A stretch of 64,000 bases of DNA from Salpingoeca rosetta (lineage: Eukaryota; Protista; Choanoflagellata), in assembly GCA_033442325.1 (NCBI GenBank), contig JAWQFM010000016.1, positions 1,035,679-1,099,678 of the forward strand, read 5' to 3'. The notes under the pieces were generated by a model. It did no database searches and was not told the DNA's origin. It saw only the letters and a list, made by a program, of their open reading frames with translations. Numbering within the stretch: position 1 is the first letter of the stretch; each line of letters begins with the position of its first letter. This document shows positions 31,085 to 41,807 of this stretch, piece by piece. The position numbers were made by a program, and so were the translations under genes.

Positions 31085-32944
31085 GACGGCAGAGACGCGG
31101 TGTTGGTGTTGGTGTTGGTGTCGGCGATGGCGCACGGGGTGGTGGCGGTGCAACAGCTAGCGGTGAAGGAAGGGAGGGCAGTGATGGTGGCGAAGGCAGT
31201 GCACGCAGTGATGGTAGGGGCGAGGCAACAGAGGCTGGCAGCTGCATTGAAGCGACGGATGCTGCTGATGAGCCAGTGCACACGACACACGAGGCTGACC
31301 AACAGCAACAACAGCAACAACAGCAAGAGCAGCAAGAGCACCAGCAAGAACAGCAACAACAACAACAGCAACAGCAACAGCAGCCACAGCTGTCTGCGTT
31401 CAAGCTGCGCCCAAGGCCATCAGCGCCACTGCACCTTGTGGTGGCGGAAGCAGCGTCCACATCCACGTTGCAGGCCCTGGTGCACTTCTGCTACACAGAC
31501 ACGCTGCCGGAATGGCTTGACGTGACGCTGGCCACCAACAGCACCATCGCCAACCTGCTTGACCTGTGCAGCCTTGCCGACCACATGCACGTGGCGCGGC
31601 TCAAGGCGCTCTGCGTGGCATGCGTCCGCATCAACACACGCGTGGACAACGTGCTCACCATCCTGCAGGCCGTCACCCGCCGCAACATGATGGACGTGCG
31701 ACAACACCTGCTCGACTTTGTGCTGCGGCCATGCAACTACCGGCACGTGGTCATGTCGCCGGAATTTGAGCACCTCCCACGCGATGTCATTGTGGAGCTG
31801 GTGCGGCAGCACGAGCTCACCCACGGCGCAGCAACTCTGCGCACCGCAGCAGCCATGTCACCACCGAACACGGGTGGCACGACTGCGACGACAACCACGG
31901 CCACGATGGGCGGAAGCGCGAGAGTGAGCGGCAGTGGGAGTGGGAGCACAATGGGCCGTGGAAGCGGCATTGCGACATCACCATCTCCGCTCTCCCGCCA
32001 GTCGTCCTCCACCCGCATCCTACTGGAGCTGACGGGGGACGCGGGACGCAGTGGCAGCGGTGGCAGCGGTGGCATCAGTGGCGGCGGTGGTGCAGACCAT
32101 ATCCAGCGTGCGCTGTTTCGTCTCTTTGACCGCGTGTTGGAGTCGTTTGTGCTGACACACGCACAAGGCCCATCGCGCACCACGAGCGAATCAAAACGTA
32201 CGCTTGTACCTGTGTACACGTGTTTGTGTGCGTATGCGTGTGCGCGCGTGTGTATGTACGTACATGTGTGTGTGTGTTTGCGTGTGTGTGTGTGCGTTTG
32301 CGTGTGTGTGTGCGTTTGCGTGTGCGTGTGTGCGTTTGCGTGTGTGTGTGTGTGTGCGTGTGCGTGTGTGTGTGCGTTTGCGTGTGCATGTGTGTGTGTG
32401 TGTGGCGTGTGCTTCAATATTATTTGACACCATTTCTGTGCTCGCAATGGCCATGCTCTTGTCTCGACAGGTGACGCACTGCTTGATCCAGACACGCTGG
32501 TTGAATTTGACGGCGGCGTGTGTCGCGTGCATGCATGCATTGTGGCAGCGCGCTGCGGCTACTTTGCATCGCTGTTCCGCTCAGGTGCGTGTACATGCCT
32601 GTGTGTGCGGGTTTGTGTGCATGGGGTTGTGCGCGCGGGGGTATAGTGTGGATGTACGTTTGAACAACTCCCTTGTCCAAGCATTGCCTCCCAACTTTCT
32701 GCATCTGCTTCCTCCTCCTTGTGGTGCCTGCAGGCATGGTGGAGGCGCGGTCCAACTGTGTCCGCCTTCTCCTGGGCGACCGCTTGCTCTCTCCTTCTGC
32801 AGCCAAGCATCTTCTCTGTTACGTCTACTTGGGCGAAGTCGAGGCCGTCTCTCCTCAGGTGCGTGAATGTTTGTTTGTGTGTGTGTGTGTGTAAATGCTT
32901 GTGTGTGTGAATGCTTGTGTGTGTGTGTGTGTGTGTGTGAATGC

Positions 32945-33012
<68 letters not shown>

Positions 33013-33252
33013 ATGTGTTTTTGACAGTTGTGGAGTGAGTCTTGGTGTCTCCATCACACCGTCCCCCATGTTCGTGTCACATCACAACACACTTTTATGG
33101 GCGCTTGCAGGATGCGGTGGTGTTGGCCTCGTGCGCCAACTACTTTTCCTTCTCAACAGCACACCTGCACGTAAGTGCAGCTTATGCACTGAGTGATGGA
33201 TGGGTGGATACGGGAAGGGGAAGACGAGAGAGGAGCGAGGGGCGAAAAGCTT

Positions 33253-33344
<92 letters not shown>

Positions 33345-33674
33345 AACACACACACAAACATGCATGTGTGCTCACGTCGCTTCACACCCCCCCCACCAAA
33401 CACCAACTCCATGGGTAGGACACGTGTCATCAGCGGATCCAGGCGACGTTGTCAACGTCCAATGCCGTGCCGGTGCTTAAAGCTGCTGCTCTTGTGCACA
33501 ACGATGATGCCAAAGAACAAGCCATGGCCATCATTGTCAAGAACCTGCCCCAACTCTCACAACAGAGCGACTTTGACACTCTTGACAAGCAGCTCTTGCT
33601 CGATGTCCTCAAGGTGTGTGCATGCAGCACGGGTTGCGTGCGCATGTGTTTATGTGTGTGCGCGCGCGACTGTG

Positions 33675-33707
<33 letters not shown>

Positions 33708-33725
33708 ACACACACACACACACAG

Positions 33726-33756
<31 letters not shown>

Positions 33757-33976
33757 TACTTGCGTCCTTGTACACGTCCCATGCGTGTTGTACCATGTAC
33801 CATGCGCATTGCGCTGTTCGCACTTTCTTGATACCCCTCACACCCGTCCATCCGTCAACCCTCCTTTCCCTCTCTTCCTTTCCCCTCCCTCCAACCATCA
33901 TCAGCGTGTCGCCGAAGCACCGCGTGTGCCAGCATGCACCACAGCCAGCACAACCGCCCATGAAACAACCGTGTAA
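28102..33976 (+). CDS. LZTR1: Leucine zipper-like transcriptional regulator 1 ortholog (Kelch repeats + two BTB-BACK), multi-exon
   Basis: [39 protein letters not shown]; [30 protein letters not shown]; RLNDMW; PPPCCNMP; RRFGHSMV; PSGRCFHSA; BTB ([17 protein letters not shown]) and BACK segments. These closely match recalled animal LZTR1 motifs. Confidence 0.88.
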
Positions 33977-34178
33977 TGCCGATTTCCGTTAAAAGATATA
34001 CACGAATCTTCAGTATTGCAATCATCCGCGCACAATCTTGCACAAAGCGCACACACACTGCACCAAAGAGCTCCACCTCCACACACGCCCAGCCACCCAG
34101 CCAGCGTGTACTCCATTTACACCACCCCACACCACCAAACCATCCCCCCCTCCCACACACACACAAAGAACGGACGCG

Positions 34179-36321
34179 ATGGCGACGCTTGCCGAGCATT
34201 TGGCGGAGCGCCGGGAGCCCGAGGCGCACGAGCTGGAGGCGAAGAACTTCCCCGAGCTGAAGAACGACCTGATTCTGCGCGCAGCACGACGCGAAGATGT
34301 GGAGCGCGTCCCCGTGTGGGTGATGCGCCAGGCAGGGAGGTACCTGCCAGAGTACAACGCCATTGGCGAAGGCCTGGACTTCTTTGACAAGTGCCGCACC
34401 CCAGCGCTCGCGTGCGCCATCACCTTGCAGCCGCTGGTGCGCTTCCCCATTGACGCCGCCATCATCTTCTCCGACATCCTCGTCATCCTGCAGGCGCTCG
34501 GCATGCACTGCGACATGGTCAAGGGCAAGGGCCCCACGTTCCCGCAGCCCATCACCTGCCGCGAGGACATTGACGCCCTCAACGCCGACGTGGACGTGCA
34601 TGAGTCCCTCGGGTACGTGTTCAAGGCCATCACGCTCACGCGCCACCGCCTGGGAGGCCACGTGCCGCTGATTGGCTTTGCCGGCGCGCCCTGGACGCTC
34701 TTCGCCTACGCCATCGAAGGCAGCGGCTCCAAGACCTTCTCCAAGGCCAAGAGCTGGCTGTACAAGGACCCGGAGGCGTCACACCGCCTCCTCTCCATGA
34801 TCACAGACGTCACCGTGCGCTACCTTGTGGCGCAGGTGCGCGCCGGTGCGCAGCTCCTGCAGGTGTTCGACTCGTGGGCAGGCAGCCTGTCCCCACGCCA
34901 CTTCCGCGAGTTTGCCGCCCCGTATCTGGTGCGCATTGCCTCCGCCGTCAAGGCCGAGCTGGGCACCGACGCCGTGCCGATGATCTGCTTTGCCAAGGGC
35001 GCGCACTGGGCCTTCAGCCTGCTCGAGTCCTCGGACTACGACGTGCTGTCGCTGGACTGGACCATGGATCCGCAGGAGGCGCAGCGCGCAACCAAGTCCC
35101 GCATGGCCTTCCAAGGCAACATGGACCCCTGCGCCATGTACGGCAGCGACGACACCATCCGCGAGGAGGTGTGCCGCGTCATGTCGCTGTTTGGCACGCG
35201 CGGGCACATTGCCAACATGGGCCACGGCATGTCCCCCGACATGGAGCCGCGCGCAGTGGCGGCCTTTGTCGACGCCGTGCACAACTTCTCCTCCCGCCAG
35301 CGCGTGTACACCATCGGCACGCGCGGGTCCGTGCTGGCGCTGTGGCAGGCGCACTACGTGCTGGATCGCCTGGTCAAGAAGTACCCGACGCACCGCTTCC
35401 GCATCAAGGTGGTTGACACGGCCGGCGACAAGGACCTCACCACCGCCCTGGACAAGTTTGGCACGACGGGCGTGTTCACGGACGCGCTGGAGCGTGCGCT
35501 CGTGTCTGGCGAGGTGGACTGTGTCGTGCACTCGCTCAAGGATGTGCCGTCCACCCTGCACCCTTCGACGCGCCTCGCCGCCATCAGCGAACGCCACGAC
35601 CCACGCGACTGCGTCGTGTTCAACCCGCGCCACAACGGCCGCTACAGCTCCATCGCCGACCTCCCACCGGGCAGCGTGCTGGGCACCAGCTCTGCGCGCC
35701 GCCGTGCGTTCCTCGCGCGTGCATACCCTTCCCTCACCTTTAAGCACGTGCGCGGGAACGTGAAGACGCGCCTGCGCAAGCTCGATGACCCGGCCAACGG
35801 ATACGACGCCCTCGTGCTCGCCTCTGCTGGCCTGGAGCGGCTGAACATGGAGGCACGGGTTGGCGAGAAGCTGAGCGTGGACGTGGTGCCGCACGCTGTT
35901 GGCCAGGCAGCGCTGGGCGTGCAGGTGCGATGCTCAGCCAAGCCGGGGCCCCATGGTGGCGAGGGCGGCGATGATGATGATGATGACGGTGACAAAGATG
36001 CTGCGGTGCTGGCGGAGATGCTGCATGCGAGTGTGCAGTGCAACGAGACGGCGCTTGTGTGCAGCGCCGAGCGTGGCTTCCTGCGCTCGCTCGGGGGCGG
36101 GTGCTCTCTGCCCATCGCAGTGCGCTCGCAGCGCGACGCCGACACGGGCCGCATCGTGCTGTGCGGCAACGTGTGCAGCGTGGACGGCAAGACGCTCGCC
36201 TCGCGCACGTGCGACGCCGTTGTGACGACAGAGGCGGAGGCCGCTGCGCTTGGCGAGAAGGTGGCTGCCGACCTCAAGGCGGACGGTGGCGAGGCCATTC
36301 TCATCGAGCTCCGGGCACAGC

Positions 36322-36358
<37 letters not shown>

Positions 36359-36392
36359 TGACGTGGACGGGCGCACCGTCGTCTCGCTCTGA
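34179..36392 (+). CDS. UROD-HMBS: Intronless fusion of uroporphyrinogen decarboxylase (UROD/HemE) and hydroxymethylbilane synthase (HMBS/HemC), 737 aa
   Basis: UROD (~34179-35300): NFPELKNDLILRAA, PVWVMRQAGRYLPEY, AAIIFSDIL, LIGFAGAPWTL, QVFDSWAG, QGNMDP, NMGHG. HMBS (~35301-36310): IGTRGSVLALWQA, GVFTDALE, VHSLKDVP, GTSSARR, RGNVKTRLRKLD, AVGQAALG, ERGFLRSLGGGCSLPI (cofactor Cys). One continuous ORF. Confidence 0.95.
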
Positions 36393-36744
36393 TGCCCTGT
36401 GTGTGTGTGTGTGTTTTCGTTGTGACTTGCCGTGTGTTGGGTTGGTGTTGTTGTGTGTCATGACCCTTTGGTTCTTTGTCGCAGTTTGCGATTGCGTGCT
36501 TGCTTGCCCCTGATGGTGTCAATGAACAGTTTAATCGTCGCAATGACATTGGCAAGAAGGCATTGTTGAGCTCAGCAAGACTGGTGCCGTGATGGCGCCA
36601 TCCCAAGCACAGGACACATGTGAAGACAAGGGGAAGACAAGGGGAAGACAAGGGGACGGACCGACAGACAGATAGCCAGACGAGCAGGAAGACAGACCTA
36701 TTTACACGCACACGTGCAGACAGACAGACAGGCAGACAGACAGG

Positions 36745-36775
<31 letters not shown>

Positions 36776-36937
36776 GCACACACACACACACAGACAGACA
36801 GACAGACACCCACACCCACACGCACACACACACAGACAGACACCCGCACCCACACCCCCCACACACACACACACAGACAGACACCCGCACCCACACCCCA
36901 CACACACATATACCCACACAGACACAGATGCAGTTGC

Positions 36938-39103
36938 CTAGGAGAGGAGGTCGACAATTTGGTTTGCGATGGATGCGCTTGTGACGATGCAGTCATTCAC
37001 GCCGACTCCAAAGCCAAACGCCTTACCGCCCACAAACAGCCACGGCAGGTGTGCCTGCACGCACGCCTCCATGTCGGCGCGAGCTGCAGCGTACAGGTGG
37101 TCAAACTGCGGGATGGCACGCACCCACCGCGTGAGACGCGAGGCAGACGGGGTGACGGCGACACCAAGGTGCTGCTGCACGCACTGCCACGCCTCATCCA
37201 GCAGCACCTGCTCGCTTGATGTCTCCACAAAGGTCTGGTGGTTGTGGCCCTCCCCGCCGAGCATGGCCGTCAGCACCACGTGCTCTGCACCTGCCAATTC
37301 GGGAAAGACGCACGAGTCGTACACCACGCCCAGGAGGTGGCCACGCGCCTGTGTGCGCGGCATGAGGAACCCAAAGCCAGGCTCAACGCCTTCCTTCACG
37401 ACGGCCTTGAAGGAGGACCGCAGGAACACAAACGTGACCACGGCAATGGACAGGCTACGTACGCGGGCGAGCTTGTTGGCGCAGGCCATGGCGCGGCGGT
37501 GCGCCGTCTCCGTGAGCGAGAGGTGCGGCAGACTGCTTGCAAGCAACTGGTGCAGCTCTGCGGGCGGCAGCGTGGAGATGACGCAATCCACGTCAACCAG
37601 CATGGGCGCCCCGTCCTCATCCAACAGCGCAACCCCGGTTCCACCGCTGCTGGCCCCGTCACCAACGCGACCACCACTCTCATCGCCATCGTCACGGCCA
37701 TCATCGCCATCATCGCCAGCACCATGGTGATGGCCGTCGTTGTCGCTGTCGGTGTCAGCGCTGCGTGCCATGCGAGCCACGGCTGCGCCCATGTGCATGT
37801 GCACGCCAGCCTCGACGACGTGTTCCCACAGGGCGGACGTGAGCGTGGTCAGGCCGCCCTTGAGCGAGGCCACGCGCTCCTTTGCGGCGCGCTGCAGCCA
37901 GCGCTCCACGCGGTCCGGCACCTGCGGGGCGGGCGGCATGATTGGGGTCTCATATGCGGCGGAGAGCTTGAGGAAGCGGTCGAGGATGGCACCCAGCACG
38001 ACGGAGCCGTACGCTTGCTCCAGCTGCCACATACTGGGGAAGGCGTAGCGCAGCAGGAGCTTGTTGGCCTCGCCGCTGAAGATGCCGTGCACGAGGGCGG
38101 TGAGGAAGCGGGTGGCGAGGTGGCGGGAAAAGTGCTTGGTGAAGAAGGCTTCGCACGTGTCGTAGCCCACGCCCTCGTCCCTGTGGAACAGGGCCTGCGT
38201 CAGGTCCCGCAGCACAGCGGGGACGAGGCTGTGGCGATACGCAAAGCCGAGGATCTGCGAGACGGAGGTGGGCAGCTCCTCAAGGGCGGCGGTGTCTTCG
38301 TCAAACACGAACCTACGGCCGCGTGTTGCACGGTTGGCCCACTCCAGCTGCGGGCCGAGACCTAGCTCGTCGATGAGCTGCAGCGCAAAGCGGGCAGAGG
38401 CGGTGGAGGTGCGCAGGGAGCGGGGCCCCGTCTCGATGCGCACGGGCGTGGACGGCTGGACAGCCTGCACAGTTTGGATGTTTCCACCCACGACATCATC
38501 CTTCTCGAACACGTGCACATCAAACTCTGGCCGCTTCTTCTTGATGTAGTATGCAGCGGCGAGTCCACTGATGCCTGCGCCCAGCACGGCGATGCGCGGG
38601 CCTTCTTCTTCTTTGTCATCATCATCATCATCACCATCATCACCATCATCGTCGCCTTTCTGCGAAGATGATGATGCTGCTGCGTCTCCTCCTCTCTTCC
38701 CTTTCTCCTGACCCTCTGTGTCTTCGTCGTCTTCAGCCTCGTCGCCACTGGCGACGCTGGCGTATGTCTTCTTCTTGTTGTGCTTGTTCTGTTGTGAGCG
38801 CTTCTTGCCCTTGCGCTTGCTGCTGCGGTGGTGGTGCTTGTGATGGATGTGGCGCCTGAAGGCTGCTGCGGTCTTGACGCGCTGCTGGTAGTCGCGGGCT
38901 TTCCTCTTTCTCTGTTGCACCCACAGGTACAAGAGCGCCAGCGTCGTGGCCGTGCCTCCGGCCGCAGCCAGTGCCAGCACACGCCCAGCTGACGTGGGCC
39001 CCTTCCTCTGCGCTGCTCCCGTCGCTGGCATCGCCGTCGTCGTTGTGTTGGGCGAGGCGATGCAAGAAAATGGAATAGCGACAGCACAAAGTGCAGTAAA
39101 CAT
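36938..39103 (-). CDS. PPOX: Intronless protoporphyrinogen oxidase (HemY/PPOX type) with N-terminal signal-anchor extension
   Basis: FAD-binding IAVLGAGISGLAAAY..VFEK..GG; ETGPRSLR; HGIFSG; LKGGLTTL; GFGFLMP; LGVVYDSCVFP; LTAMLGG; AIPQF; GVGVNDCI. Start at 39103 or 39031. Confidence 0.92.
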   Translation of the reverse strand: MFTALCAVAIPFSCIASPNTTTTAMPATGAAQRKGPTSAGRVLALAAAGGTATTLALLYLWVQQRKRKARDYQQRVKTAAAFRRHIHHKHHHRSSKRKGKKRSQQNKHNKKKTYASVASGDEAEDDEDTEGQEKGKRGGDAAASSSSQKGDDDGDDGDDDDDDKEEEGPRIAVLGAGISGLAAAYYIKKKRPEFDVHVFEKDDVVGGNIQTVQAVQPSTPVRIETGPRSLRTSTASARFALQLIDELGLGPQLEWANRATRGRRFVFDEDTAALEELPTSVSQILGFAYRHSLVPAVLRDLTQALFHRDEGVGYDTCEAFFTKHFSRHLATRFLTALVHGIFSGEANKLLLRYAFPSMWQLEQAYGSVVLGAILDRFLKLSAAYETPIMPPAPQVPDRVERWLQRAAKERVASLKGGLTTLTSALWEHVVEAGVHMHMGAAVARMARSADTDSDNDGHHHGAGDDGDDGRDDGDESGGRVGDGASSGGTGVALLDEDGAPMLVDVDCVISTLPPAELHQLLASSLPHLSLTETAHRRAMACANKLARVRSLSIAVVTFVFLRSSFKAVVKEGVEPGFGFLMPRTQARGHLLGVVYDSCVFPELAGAEHVVLTAMLGGEGHNHQTFVETSSEQVLLDEAWQCVQQHLGVAVTPSASRLTRWVRAIPQFDHLYAAARADMEACVQAHLPWLFVGGKAFGFGVGVNDCIVTSASIANQIVDLLS

Positions 39104-39848
39104 CGGTTGCGCGAAGCGAGAGAGAGAGAGCTTCGAATCGTTCGTTCAATCTTGCGTGGTGTTGCTCGCACACATGTTGCTTGCTTTTTGCTTGCTTGCG
39201 TAGGTCCCACACTCTCTTCCGCTCTGCGTATGCTGCTTGTCCTCCTCGCCACCCGCCTGCCTGCCAGCTCAGCAGCAGCAGCAGCATTGATTGATTGATT
39301 GCCGAGAGCGCTTTGCTTTGGCTTTGTTTCGAAGGAGGGTTTTTGTGTGTTGGGTGTGCGTGGGTTGTGTGGCGTCGTCACAGCCAGCCAGCAGGGGTCG
39401 TGCAGAGACCTTGTATCCTGACGTAGCTCTGGAGGAGGAGCGACCAATCTGTGCTGTGTGCCAACCGCCTGGCCCATTTCGGTTGGTGCTGTTGTCGGTG
39501 GTGGTGGTGCTTTTGAAAACAGACATAAGAGTACACTGCCGAGAGTGCTGCCGTGAGTGATAGAGCTACCCATCAGGCTGATTTGGCTTCTTTCTCATTG
39601 TGCGCTCCATTTTGCATCAGGTCCATTCTTTCGATCCACTCCCTCCCTCCCCCCCCACCCTTTCTCATACACTCTCTCGCGTGCGCGTGTCAAGCTTTGT
39701 TTGCCTTTCTCCTTTTCATTCCTCAACAAATCATTCCCTCTGCCTTTTCTTTTTCTCTCACCCGCCCCCCCTTCCCCTGTCCTCTCACATCATTCCTTTT
39801 TGTCTCGTCTCCTCTCTCATCCCTGTGACTTTCCCCAAGCCAGTGAGA
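39104..39848. promoter_or_regulatory. Putative bidirectional promoter shared by PPOX and ALAS
   Basis: About 750-bp head-to-head intergenic region with TGACGT (39419) and CCAAT (39444); function inferred only. Confidence 0.45.
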
Positions 39849-41093
39849 ATGCACGGGATCTCGAAACACTTTCGCCCCCGCGTGGTTGCGGCGTGGATGC
39901 GCCATCGAGCGACCGCGACGGCAACGGCGGTGGCGCCGGCCAAGCGACGCCTGTCCCTTGCTGCCACCTCCCTCTCATCATCAAAGGACGACAACGGCCA
40001 CGCCCATGGCCACGCCCATGGCCACATGCACGGCCACATGCACGGCCACATGCACGATGAGCCGCAGTGCTCGTTTGTTGGCCCGGATGGCAAGCCCGTG
40101 TGCGCGACCAACACGGTGGAGACGCTGCGGCGCTCGTGCCCTGCTGGCACGACGTCGGTGCCGCTGCCGGAGCACGAGCCCATGGAGACGATCGAGAGCA
40201 GGCATCCGCCGGTGATGGACGTGGACCCTGCCACGGTGAGCCAGGGCCTGCGCCTCAACAACGCGGGCCAGTGCCCGTTCCTGAAGGAGGTAGGCCACCA
40301 GATCAAGGACAAGCCCGTGGTGCAAGCAGCACTGCAGTCGCGCCACCCAGAGTCTGGCAAGCTGTTCAAGGCCGTGATTGACGACGCCCTGCTCACCGTG
40401 CTCAAGCAGCTGCGCCAGCAGAAGCGGTACCGCGAGTTTCTCTACTTCAAGCGCTCCGTCGGCCAGCACCCGGAGGTGGTGCACACCCTGCACCCGGGCC
40501 ACAACCAGTTTCTCCCGCCCGGCAGCGACACCATTCTCCCGCAAGGCGTCACTTCGCAGCCGCACGCCAACGCGTCCACCGTCGCTGGCGTGTCATCGTC
40601 GTCATCAGCGGGACACGCGGCGGCCGTGGACGAGCATGAGCACCGGTCAGTGAAGCAGGACCGCGTGGTGGTCAACTGGTGCTCCAACGACTACCTGAAC
40701 ATGGCGCACCACCCATCCGTGATTGAGGCCATGCAGCGGGCGCTGGTCGAGCAAGGCGCCGGTGCTGGCGGTACGCGCAACATCTCCGGGTCAAACGTCG
40801 TGCACGTGGAGCTTGAGAATGAGCTGGCATCGCTCTGCGACACTGAGGCTGCCCTCATCTTCAACTCATGCTACACCGCAAACCTTGGTGCGTGCATGTG
40901 CGTGTGTGTGTGTGTGTGTTTGGGGTGTGTGTGTGTTTGTGCATGTGTGTGTGTGTGTGTGTGTGTTTGGTGCGCTCTGGATCCTTGCATGCATGCTGCC
41001 GCTGTCACACGGCGTGGTGTTGCACATCCACTCGATCGCACGGCCCATCCCCCACTTAACGTCCCGAGAAATTCCACTCACCTCGTCTTTCCC

Positions 41094-41186
<93 letters not shown>

Positions 41187-41807
41187 GCATGGTGCAGGGG
41201 TGATGGAGGCGCTGTCATCCACGCTCAAGGGGGAGACGGTGATCATATCGGACCAGGAGAACCACGCGTCCCTCGTGCAGGGCATCCGAAACACCCGCCT
41301 GCCCAAGAAGATTTTCCGCCACAACGACCTTGATCATCTCGAACAGATTCTCAAGGACACGCCCCGCGACACAAACAAGGTGTGCGCACGTGTGTGTATG
41401 TGTGTATGTGTGTGTATGTGTGTATGTGTGTGTGTGCGTGTGCGCGCGTGCGTGTGGGAGGAGGATGGTTACGTGCACAAATTTGAGCAACGGGTTGCTG
41501 CCACGAATAAGTTACAATACACATACACACACATGCACACATGCACACACACATGCACACACACACTCACCACCTACCTCGTCCTTTCTCCATTCCCTTG
41601 ACAAATGTATTCGCCGTAGGTTGTGGTGTTTGAGAGCGTGTACTCCATGTCCGGGACAATGGCACCCGTGTCGGCCATCCTTGACCTGTGCGAGGAGTAC
41701 GGTGCACTCTCTGTCATCGATGAGGTGCATGCTGTTGGTCTCTATGGCGAGCAGGGCGCAGGCATTCTGGACATGATTGGCCAGCGCGGCAGGGCAGACA
41801 TCGTCAC

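What the first reader, a model, noticed from the sequence alone, without database searches (positions are those of the whole stretch)
34179..36392. UROD-HMBS (HemE-HemC) fusion joining two non-consecutive steps and skipping UROS
Seen: one 737-aa ORF with a complete UROD (RQAGR, FSDIL, GHG) joined through about FSSRQRVY to a complete HMBS (HSLKD, GGGC cofactor Cys). Known: HMBS makes hydroxymethylbilane, UROS must invert it to uroporphyrinogen III before UROD acts, and without UROS it cyclises to the dead-end isomer I. The fusions I know involve HemD (HemC-HemD, CobA-HemD), not HemE-HemC. Inference: the protein may scaffold a HMBS-UROS-UROD metabolon, or carry cryptic cosynthase activity as reported for Plasmodium PBGD.
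Basis: partly seen in the sequence, partly recalled or inferred. Interest (0 to 1): 0.88.

Follow-up and report, generated by a model that had tools for sequence, protein, structure and literature searches.

The report
Expressed UROD-HMBS fused heme enzyme
The choanoflagellate Salpingoeca rosetta makes two non-adjacent heme-pathway enzymes (uroporphyrinogen decarboxylase and hydroxymethylbilane synthase) as one expressed protein; the same rare fusion occurs in several other protist and fungal lineages, but nothing shows that it replaces the skipped enzyme, UROS.

Summary
Confirmed. Window 34179-36392 (+) is one intronless 737-aa ORF. It holds a complete UROD domain (aa 28-369), a linker of about 8 residues, and a complete HMBS domain (aa 378-700). 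Every catalytic residue I checked is conserved. Stranded RNA-seq covers it without a break or splice, up to a poly(A) site at 36539.

It is the only UROD and the only HMBS found in the 55-Mb genome (Salpingoeca rosetta). It lies in a heme gene cluster with PPOX and ALAS, and FECH is about 64 kb upstream.

The architecture is rare but not unique:
- other choanoflagellates (Barroeca, Hartaetosiga);
- Thecamonas;
- Blastocladiomycota, as CPOX-UROD-HMBS;
- unnamed metagenome eukaryotes, often next to other heme genes.

A bacterium carries the reverse fusion (HemC-HemE) with a separate hemD overlapping its 3' end.

The protein has no UROS domain. I could not find UROS in the genome, but the six-frame search is too weak for an intron-split, poorly conserved gene, so this is unresolved.

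Most likely it is a bifunctional cytosolic enzyme working with a separate UROS. Channelling and cryptic cosynthase activity are untested. I found no paper describing the fusion; databases annotate it automatically. Two other first-stage notes of this scan cover the same stretch.

The parts
34068..34178 (+). 5' UTR of the fusion mRNA (approximate start)
   Evidence: The contig of run X8 (guessed, not recorded, to be RNA) begins at 34068, and RNA depth rises from about 34100. No ATG lies upstream in this stretch. The upstream gene's poly(A) site is at 34015.
34179..36392 (+). CDS of the 737-aa UROD-HMBS protein (stop codon included), intronless
   Evidence: ORF; Pfam; continuous RNA cover with no joints or indels.
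34260..35285 (+). UROD domain (aa 28-369)
   Evidence: PF01208, E 3.5e-132. About 54% identity to human UROD (phmmer E 1e-127), with R50, R54, D99, Y177, S232 and H349 matching human R37, R41, D86, Y164, S219 and H339. Model against 1URO: TM 0.96, rmsd 1.3 A.
35286..35309 (+). Junction or linker (aa 370-377, ..FSSRQRVY..)
   Evidence: The alignments to human UROD and human HMBS end and start here. The junction is in the same position, within a few residues, in all 13 aligned fusion proteins.
35310..35933 (+). HMBS domains 1-2 (aa 378-585, cofactor- and substrate-binding)
   Evidence: PF01379, E 4.9e-70. R382, S384, Q390, D455, R507, R508, R525, R531, R554 and Q576 match human R26, S28, Q34, D99, R149, R150, R167, R173, R195 and Q217.
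35940..35993 (+). Acidic low-complexity insert (aa 588-605, GPHGGEGGDDDDDDGDK), absent from human HMBS
   Evidence: Gap in the alignment to human HMBS; pLDDT about 52 in the model.
36054..36278 (+). HMBS C-terminal domain (aa 626-700) with the cofactor cysteine C642 (GGGCS)
   Evidence: PF03900, E 7.3e-13. C642 is invariant in all the aligned fusions and aligns with human C261.
36327..36356 (+). PolyQ run (aa 717-726) in the C-terminal tail
   Evidence: Translation. The read-laying tool skipped this stretch as a repeat.
36393..36539 (+). 3' UTR up to the poly(A) site
   Evidence: Seven reads end at 36539 followed by an A run. The convergent PPOX transcript ends at about 36517, so the two 3' ends overlap by about 20 nt.
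36938..39103 (-). Neighbouring PPOX gene (721 aa, one open frame), convergent with the fusion; part of the heme cluster
   Evidence: Pfam Amino_oxidase and NAD_binding_8. Best solved relative is human protoporphyrinogen oxidase 3NKS, E 5.9e-31.
39600..41601 (+). ALAS gene (multi-exon; only part of its extent was checked here); part of the heme cluster
   Evidence: Pfam Aminotran_1_2 in two ORF pieces. Best solved relatives are 5-aminolevulinate synthases, E 1.8e-22.

Best explanation
This is a genuine bifunctional heme-pathway enzyme of Salpingoeca rosetta. One unspliced mRNA encodes an N-terminal uroporphyrinogen decarboxylase (step 5) joined by a linker of about 8 residues to a C-terminal hydroxymethylbilane synthase (step 3). 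Both halves are catalytically intact, and together they are the cell's only UROD and HMBS. It has no presequence, so it should act in the cytosol, as the separate animal enzymes do.

Inferred mechanism: the HMBS half builds hydroxymethylbilane from porphobilinogen. A separate UROS, not yet located and probably intron-split and divergent, closes it to uroporphyrinogen III. The UROD half, dimerising as UROD normally does, decarboxylates that to coproporphyrinogen III.

The likely benefit of the fusion is obligatory 1:1 co-expression and co-location of the steps on either side of two unstable intermediates. Direct channelling or UROS docking is possible but not shown.

The gene belongs to a rare family of UROD-to-HMBS fusions found in choanoflagellates, Thecamonas, Blastocladiomycota and unnamed protists. 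These often lie in heme gene clusters.
For: Shown:
- One ORF with both domains.
- A single continuous unspliced transcript with its own 5' end and poly(A) site.
- All checked catalytic and cofactor residues kept in both halves.
- AF2 model with pLDDT 94.3 and pTM 0.91; each half superposes on solved UROD (TM 0.96) and HMBS (TM 0.87-0.95).
- Only one URO-D hit and one Porphobil_deam hit in the whole genome, both in this gene.
- ALAD, CPOX, FECH, PPOX and ALAS are all present, so the pathway is otherwise complete.
- The N-terminus aligns from residue 10 with the N-terminus of human cytosolic UROD, with no extension.
- The fusion and its junction are conserved at 38-78% identity across Barroeca, Hartaetosiga, Thecamonas, three Blastocladiomycota and metagenome eukaryotes.
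- An independent bacterial fusion in the reverse order (HemC-HemE) is followed by a hemD gene that overlaps its 3' end by 4 nt. This shows that HMBS+UROD fusions coexist with a separate UROS.

Inferred: the cytosolic location, the dimer, the separate UROS and the selective benefit.
Against: - No UROS was found in the genome with Pfam HEM4 at E up to 10, a bacterial HEM4 profile, a single HEM4 domain, my own HMM over about 204 kb around the heme genes, or a motif scan.
- No enzymatic data exist.
- The test for a specific interface between the two halves gave no verdict.
- Whether fusion gives any kinetic advantage is unknown.
Confidence: 0.75

Rival explanations
1. Obligate metabolon. The fusion is a rigid scaffold that docks UROS between the HMBS and UROD active sites, so hydroxymethylbilane and uroporphyrinogen III are channelled and never released. 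This refines the best explanation and does not exclude it.
For: - The linker is very short and the junction is conserved.
- The pTM of 0.91 for the two-domain model suggests a defined mutual orientation.
- The two enzymes were fused at least twice independently, in opposite orders.
- Related organisms also fuse other heme steps, PPOX-FECH and CPOX-UROD-HMBS.
- Both intermediates are chemically unstable (PMC4921024, Table 3).
Against: - There is no UROS sequence to test docking with.
- The interface test gave no verdict.
- I had no coordinates to measure distances between the active sites.
- The same paper notes that fusion alone did not promote channelling in earlier experiments.
Confidence: 0.25
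2. Cryptic cosynthase. Choanoflagellates lack a canonical UROS, and the fused enzyme itself, or a non-homologous partner, performs the ring-D inversion.
For: No HEM4 match was found anywhere in the genome with four different queries. None of the six heme-gene neighbourhoods examined in related eukaryotes holds a HEM4 gene (HMM scan of L012-L018).
Against: - The protein has no domain or insert beyond UROD and HMBS, apart from low-complexity loops.
- The HMBS half is ordinary in sequence and fold.
- The six-frame search is weak here. Even the highly conserved ALAD was seen only as four short exon hits with E 2e-7 to 2e-4, so a divergent, intron-split UROS would be missed.
- The bacterial analogue keeps a separate hemD.
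Confidence: 0.05
3. One half is a catalytically dead remnant, so the protein is effectively monofunctional.
For: None found. Considered only because fused domains sometimes decay.
Against: All checked active-site residues are kept in both halves and across the homologues. No second UROD or HMBS gene exists to supply the activity. The rest of the pathway is present.
Confidence: 0.03
4. Assembly or gene-model artefact: two adjacent genes wrongly read as one.
For: None.
Against: The frame is uninterrupted. RNA depth is 41-45 across the junction with no indels or joints, and an independent contig spans it. The same fusion appears in independent transcriptomes and genomes of other species.
Confidence: 0.01

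Closest known systems
Separate cytosolic UROD and HMBS of animals (human UROD 1URO/1R3Q; human HMBS 3ECR/7CCX)
   Same: Each half is an ordinary orthologue-type enzyme. The UROD half is about 54% identical to human UROD (TM 0.96). The HMBS half is 34-40% identical to human HMBS (TM 0.84-0.91). All checked catalytic residues are kept. The nearest standalone URODs are animal ones, at about 60% identity.
   Different: Here the two are one polypeptide. The UROD C-terminal tail and the HMBS N-terminal leader are trimmed to a linker of about 8 residues. Compared with human HMBS there is an extra acidic insert and a polyQ tail.
Bacterial HemC-HemD (PBGD/UROS) and CobA-HemD fusions
   Same: Multifunctional tetrapyrrole enzymes thought to protect unstable intermediates (PMC4921024, Table 3).
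   Different: Those fusions join consecutive steps and include UROS. This one joins steps 3 and 5 and leaves UROS out.
Bacterial HemD-HemE fusions (P0156, P0179, P0202, P0203, P0221)
   Same: UROD fused to another enzyme of the same pathway segment. One lies in a hemN-hemH-hemY operon.
   Different: The partner is UROS, at the N-terminus, so the steps are consecutive. They are bacterial, and their UROD groups with bacterial sequences.
Bacterial HemC-HemE fusion P0170, with hemD immediately downstream (L066)
   Same: The same two enzymes are fused and UROS is left separate.
   Different: The domain order is reversed (HMBS then UROD). It is in a bacterial operon, and its UROD half groups with bacterial sequences, so the origin is independent.
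CPOX-UROD-HMBS triple fusions of Blastocladiomycota (Paraphysoderma KAI9143088.1, Blastocladiella KAI9219916.1, Coelomomyces KAJ1507812.1) and metagenome P0140/P0277
   Same: The same UROD-to-HMBS order and the same junction position.
   Different: They carry an extra N-terminal CPOX or CPOX-like domain. In the UROD tree they form a separate starred clade, away from the choanoflagellate fusions.
Plasmodium falciparum PBGD, reported to have UROS activity
   Different: No feature of this protein suggests such activity. The one malaria paper I opened draws UROS as a separate step of the parasite's pathway (PMC4532139).

Membership tests
Uroporphyrinogen decarboxylase (Pfam URO-D PF01208; EC 4.1.1.37) | Full-length match to the family profile above the curated cut-off | tested here: met
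   441 bits against a cut-off of 23.9, covering profile positions 2-345 of 346.
Uroporphyrinogen decarboxylase (Pfam URO-D PF01208; EC 4.1.1.37) | Substrate-binding and catalytic residues (human R37, R41, D86, Y164, S219, H339) | tested here: met
   R50, R54, D99, Y177, S232 and H349 align with them. All but H349 are invariant in the 13 aligned fusions.
Uroporphyrinogen decarboxylase (Pfam URO-D PF01208; EC 4.1.1.37) | (beta/alpha)8-barrel fold of solved URODs | tested here: met
   Model against human UROD: TM 0.96, rmsd 1.3 A over about 353 columns.
Uroporphyrinogen decarboxylase (Pfam URO-D PF01208; EC 4.1.1.37) | Decarboxylase activity; homodimer | not testable with these tools
   Needs protein. 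Two full-length copies (1474 residues) exceed the complex predictor's size limit.
Hydroxymethylbilane synthase (Pfam PF01379 + PF03900; EC 2.5.1.61) | Matches to both family profiles above the cut-offs | tested here: met
   235.7 bits and 49.1 bits.
Hydroxymethylbilane synthase (Pfam PF01379 + PF03900; EC 2.5.1.61) | Dipyrromethane-cofactor cysteine, catalytic Asp and the Arg cluster (human C261, D99, R26, R149, R150, R167, R173, R195) | tested here: met
   C642, D455, R382, R507, R508, R525, R531 and R554.
Hydroxymethylbilane synthase (Pfam PF01379 + PF03900; EC 2.5.1.61) | Three-domain fold of solved HMBS | tested here: met
   TM 0.84-0.95 to human and E. coli HMBS.
UROD-to-HMBS fused bifunctional proteins (database architecture PF01208-PF01379-PF03900) | Both domains in one translated product from one transcript | tested here: met
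   Uninterrupted frame. RNA cover across the junction without joints or indels.
UROD-to-HMBS fused bifunctional proteins (database architecture PF01208-PF01379-PF03900) | Same domain order and same junction as the other members | tested here: met
   Alignment A1 of 13 fusions. In the UROD tree it groups with the Barroeca and Hartaetosiga fusions (98*).
Uroporphyrinogen-III synthase (Pfam HEM4 PF02602) as a third activity of this protein | A HEM4 domain or any unassigned domain-sized segment in the protein | tested here: not met
   Pfam finds only URO-D and the two HMBS families. The unassigned residues are an 18-aa acidic loop and a helical polyQ tail.
Consecutive-step heme fusions (HemC-HemD, HemD-HemE type) | The fused enzymes share a metabolite (the product of one is the substrate of the other) | tested here: not met
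   HMBS makes hydroxymethylbilane and UROD uses uroporphyrinogen III (established pathway knowledge). The intervening UROS domain is absent.

The most novel reading that the evidence does not exclude
Choanoflagellates, and the other lineages that carry this fusion, have no canonical UROS. The rigid UROD-HMBS enzyme itself, or a non-homologous partner recruited to it, directs ring-D inversion. In that case the fusion marks a previously unknown way of making uroporphyrinogen III.
Probability: 0.05. Interest if true: 0.9.

Novelty: new variant of a known kind. Interest (0 to 1): 0.55.

Why it matters
Multifunctional tetrapyrrole enzymes are known, but the ones listed in the literature join consecutive steps and involve UROS.

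This fusion joins the steps on either side of UROS. It is conserved, expressed and the sole copy of both enzymes. It has arisen at least twice, in opposite orders. That is 'Rosetta-stone' evidence that HMBS and UROD work in physical proximity, and so that the cytosolic heme steps may form a complex with UROS. That idea is old and has not been settled.

The fusion also offers a natural, tractable protein for testing channelling of hydroxymethylbilane and uroporphyrinogen III.

The wider pattern seen here has, as far as my searches show, not been described: heme gene clusters in holozoan-like protists, together with CPOX-UROD-HMBS and PPOX-FECH fusions. It could also serve as a rare genomic character for the deep phylogeny of Obazoa.

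If UROS is simply a separate gene, as I expect, the finding is a useful curiosity and not a new mechanism.

Tried and rejected
- **UROS hunt, all blank.**
  - Pfam HEM4 six-frame search at default E and at E up to 10.
  - A profile of three bacterial HEM4 domains and a single HEM4 domain.
  - My own HMM of five bacterial HEM4 domains against 4146 six-frame ORFs, taken from the window plus 140 kb around FECH, CPOX and ALAD.
  - The same HMM against the related heme-cluster contigs L012-L018.
  - A motif scan for FFSPS[GA], a motif I recalled from memory. Only the first 30 of 69 hits could be read and none was UROS-like.
  - Pfam at permissive thresholds on unannotated ORFs in the related clusters.
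  - These blanks carry little weight. I could not obtain a eukaryotic UROS sequence as a query, and the search works exon by exon.
- **Domain-domain interface test.** With the two halves given as separate chains the score was 0.01, which the tool reports as 'no answer'. It is not evidence either way.
- **Literature.** Six full-text searches and six papers opened gave no description of a UROD-HMBS fusion.
- **Single origin of all fusions.** The AU tests do not reject it for UROD (p 0.53). For HMBS they do not reject it (p 0.15) once P0285 and the reverse-order P0170 are left out. P0285 is a truncated fusion fragment. With both included, p was 0.0004. Non-rejection does not show a clade, so the origin stays open.
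- **Horizontal transfer as the reason the gene has no introns.** Rejected for now, because the nearest standalone relatives of both halves are animal and fungal.
Full report
**Observation.** The window holds one open frame at 34038-36392 (+). The first ATG is at 34179 and gives 737 aa. Pfam places URO-D at aa 28-369 (E 3.5e-132), Porphobil_deam at aa 378-585 (E 4.9e-70) and Porphobil_deamC at aa 626-700 (E 7.3e-13). Nothing else matches.

**Organism.** The genome is 55.4 Mb in 68 contigs, and the window is C16:1035679-1099678. The closest full-length relatives are from the choanoflagellates Barroeca monosierra (71%) and Hartaetosiga balthica (68%).

**Expression.**
- Two stranded RNA-seq runs cover about 34100 to 36540 continuously, at depth 10-80 and 41-45 over the junction.
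- There is no joint, insertion or deletion, and reads end in an A run at 36539.
- The strand is the + strand: the first mate lies on the minus strand, as in most stranded libraries.
- An independent 2285-nt contig, from a run guessed (not recorded) to be RNA, spans 34068-36317 without a difference.
- The upstream gene ends at a poly(A) site at 34015, and depth dips between the two genes.
- The convergent PPOX transcript ends at about 36517.
- No ATG precedes 34179 in the 5' UTR.

So this is one intronless gene and one mRNA.

**Integrity of both enzymes.**
- The UROD half is about 54% identical to human UROD (phmmer E 1e-127). It keeps R50, R54, D99, Y177, S232 and H349, which match human R37, R41, D86, Y164, S219 and H339.
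- The HMBS half matches human HMBS at E 2.6e-62. It keeps R382, S384, Q390, D455, R507, R508, R525, R531, R554, Q576 and the cofactor cysteine C642.
- All but H349 are invariant across 13 fusion proteins.
- Compared with the human enzymes, the UROD C-terminal tail and the HMBS N-terminal leader are gone. The last UROD helix (..FVDAVHNFS) is followed after three residues by the first HMBS strand (RVYTIGTRGS).
- The extras relative to human HMBS are an 18-aa acidic insert (aa 588-605) and a polyQ tail.
- The AF2 model has pLDDT 94.3 and pTM 0.91. The halves superpose on human UROD (TM 0.96) and on human or E. coli HMBS (TM 0.84-0.95). No solved entry spans both.
- The N-terminus aligns with that of cytosolic human UROD, without a presequence.

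**Genomic context.**
- This gene gives the only URO-D hit and the only Porphobil_deam hit in the genome.
- ALAD (C10), CPOX (C11) and FECH (C16, about 64 kb upstream of the fusion gene) are present.
- Directly downstream lie PPOX (36938-39103, minus strand; best solved relative human PPOX) and then ALAS (from 39600, plus strand).
- So the fusion sits in a small heme gene cluster, as another first-stage note had proposed.

**UROS.**
- No HEM4 match was found with any query.
- I give this little weight. The search is exon by exon, and even ALAD appeared only as four short exon hits with E 2e-7 to 2e-4.
- HEM4 is a weakly conserved family, and I could not obtain a eukaryotic UROS to use as a query.
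- The protein itself has no room for a UROS domain.

**Distribution.**
- An exhaustive scan of 1.84 billion representative proteins found the UROD-to-HMBS order in 11 clusters at 50% identity among the best 150 hits. Fusions score on both domains, so they should rank at the top.
- Named members are Thecamonas trahens (Apusomonadida), and three Blastocladiomycota in which a CPOX or CPOX-like domain precedes UROD-HMBS.
- Unnamed metagenome members sit on eukaryote-like contigs, next to genes such as tubulin, Arf, G-alpha and SH2-tyrosine kinase.
- These contigs often carry other heme genes:
  - FECH, CPOX, PPOX, UROD-HMBS and ALAS within 13 kb;
  - ALAD head-to-head with the fusion;
  - in one contig, a PPOX-FECH fusion plus a CPOX-UROD-HMBS fusion.
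- None of these neighbourhoods holds HEM4 (Pfam gene tables; HMM scan of L012-L018; Pfam on unannotated ORFs).
- Bacteria have HemD-HemE fusions.
- One bacterial contig has the reverse HemC-HemE fusion. A separate 244-aa HEM4 gene overlaps its 3' end by 4 nt. This is the best comparative argument that an HMBS+UROD fusion works with a free UROS.

**Phylogeny.**
- In the UROD tree, the choanoflagellate fusions plus the metagenome group form a starred clade (97). The Blastocladiomycota-type fusions form another (97). Thecamonas and the unfused animal, Capsaspora and fungal sequences are unresolved around them.
- In the HMBS tree, the choanoflagellate fusions join Thecamonas (91), next to fungi.
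- AU tests do not reject one clade of all fusions for UROD (p 0.53). For HMBS they do not reject it either (p 0.15), once P0285 and the bacterial reverse fusion P0170 are left out.
- P0285 is a truncated fusion fragment: it begins inside the last UROD helix. With both included, p was 0.0004.
- A single ancient fusion with later fissions, several independent fusions, and transfer all remain open.
- The nearest standalone relatives of both halves are animal and fungal, so recent bacterial origin is unlikely despite the missing introns.

**Mechanism.**
- What is shown: two intact enzymes on one chain and one transcript, the sole copy of each, conserved across lineages.
- What is inferred: the cytosolic location, dimerisation through the UROD half, a separate UROS, and a benefit from fixed stoichiometry and proximity around two unstable intermediates. 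PMC4921024 lists hydroxymethylbilane and uroporphyrinogen III as unstable metabolites at fused steps, and also notes that fusion alone did not give channelling in earlier work.
- A test for a specific interface between the halves gave no verdict.

**Novelty.** Six full-text searches and six papers opened gave no description of this fusion. Databases hold it under generic or automatic names, including 'uroporphyrinogen decarboxylase' and once 'hydroxymethylbilane synthase/uroporphyrinogen decarboxylase'. I class it as a new variant of a known kind (multifunctional tetrapyrrole enzymes). It is of moderate interest unless UROS proves truly absent.

Noticed in passing
window 34179-41601 and G000:C16:1005053-1006695: Heme gene cluster in a eukaryote. 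UROD-HMBS (+), PPOX (-) and ALAS (+) are adjacent, with FECH about 64 kb upstream of the fusion gene on the same contig. A related arrangement (FECH, CPOX, PPOX, UROD-HMBS, ALAS within 13 kb) occurs on metagenome contigs L014/L016, whose UROD groups with choanoflagellates.
   Followed up: partly
L065:374-2623 and L065:10001-12931: One 39-kb metagenome contig encodes a PPOX-FECH fusion (749 aa; Amino_oxidase plus Ferrochelatase, E 7e-67) and a CPOX-UROD-HMBS fusion (976 aa). An FTR1 iron permease lies next to the triple fusion. Five of the eight heme steps are therefore on two polypeptides.
   Followed up: partly
L066:1082-3813: Bacterial HemC-HemE fusion (666 aa, HMBS then UROD). A separate 244-aa hemD (HEM4) overlaps its stop by 4 nt. 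This is an independent fusion of the same two enzymes in reverse order.
   Followed up: partly
L019:1010-6877: Bacterial operon with a HemD-HemE fusion (646 aa) followed by hemN, hemH and hemY. Several further HemD-HemE fusion clusters exist (P0179, P0202, P0203, P0221).
   Followed up: partly
L064:8413-11941: On a metagenome eukaryote-like contig, ALAD (326 aa, minus strand) lies head-to-head with a 646-aa UROD-HMBS fusion.
   Followed up: no
window 36517-36539: The convergent fusion and PPOX mRNAs end within about 20 nt of each other and overlap slightly. The poly(A) sites are at 36539 (+) and about 36517 (-).
   Followed up: no
window 36938-39103 (-): The PPOX protein has an N-terminal extension of about 170 aa, with a hydrophobic stretch and Lys/His-rich and acidic low-complexity runs. 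It also has an acidic Gly/Asp-rich insert inside the enzyme. Like the fusion gene, it is one uninterrupted open frame.
   Followed up: no
window 32580-33990 and 36400-36900: Long (CA)n/(GT)n microsatellites flank the genes and create many spurious Cys/Val- or His/Thr-rich ORFs. The upstream gene (BTB/Kelch-like C-terminus) is spliced, with a junction at 33903, and ends at a poly(A) site at 34015.
   Followed up: no
P0032 / P0128 (metagenome fusions): In this divergent pair of fusions the UROD motif GHG reads GNG, so the equivalent of human H339 is Asn. They also carry long inserts in both halves. The UROD half may be altered there.
   Followed up: no
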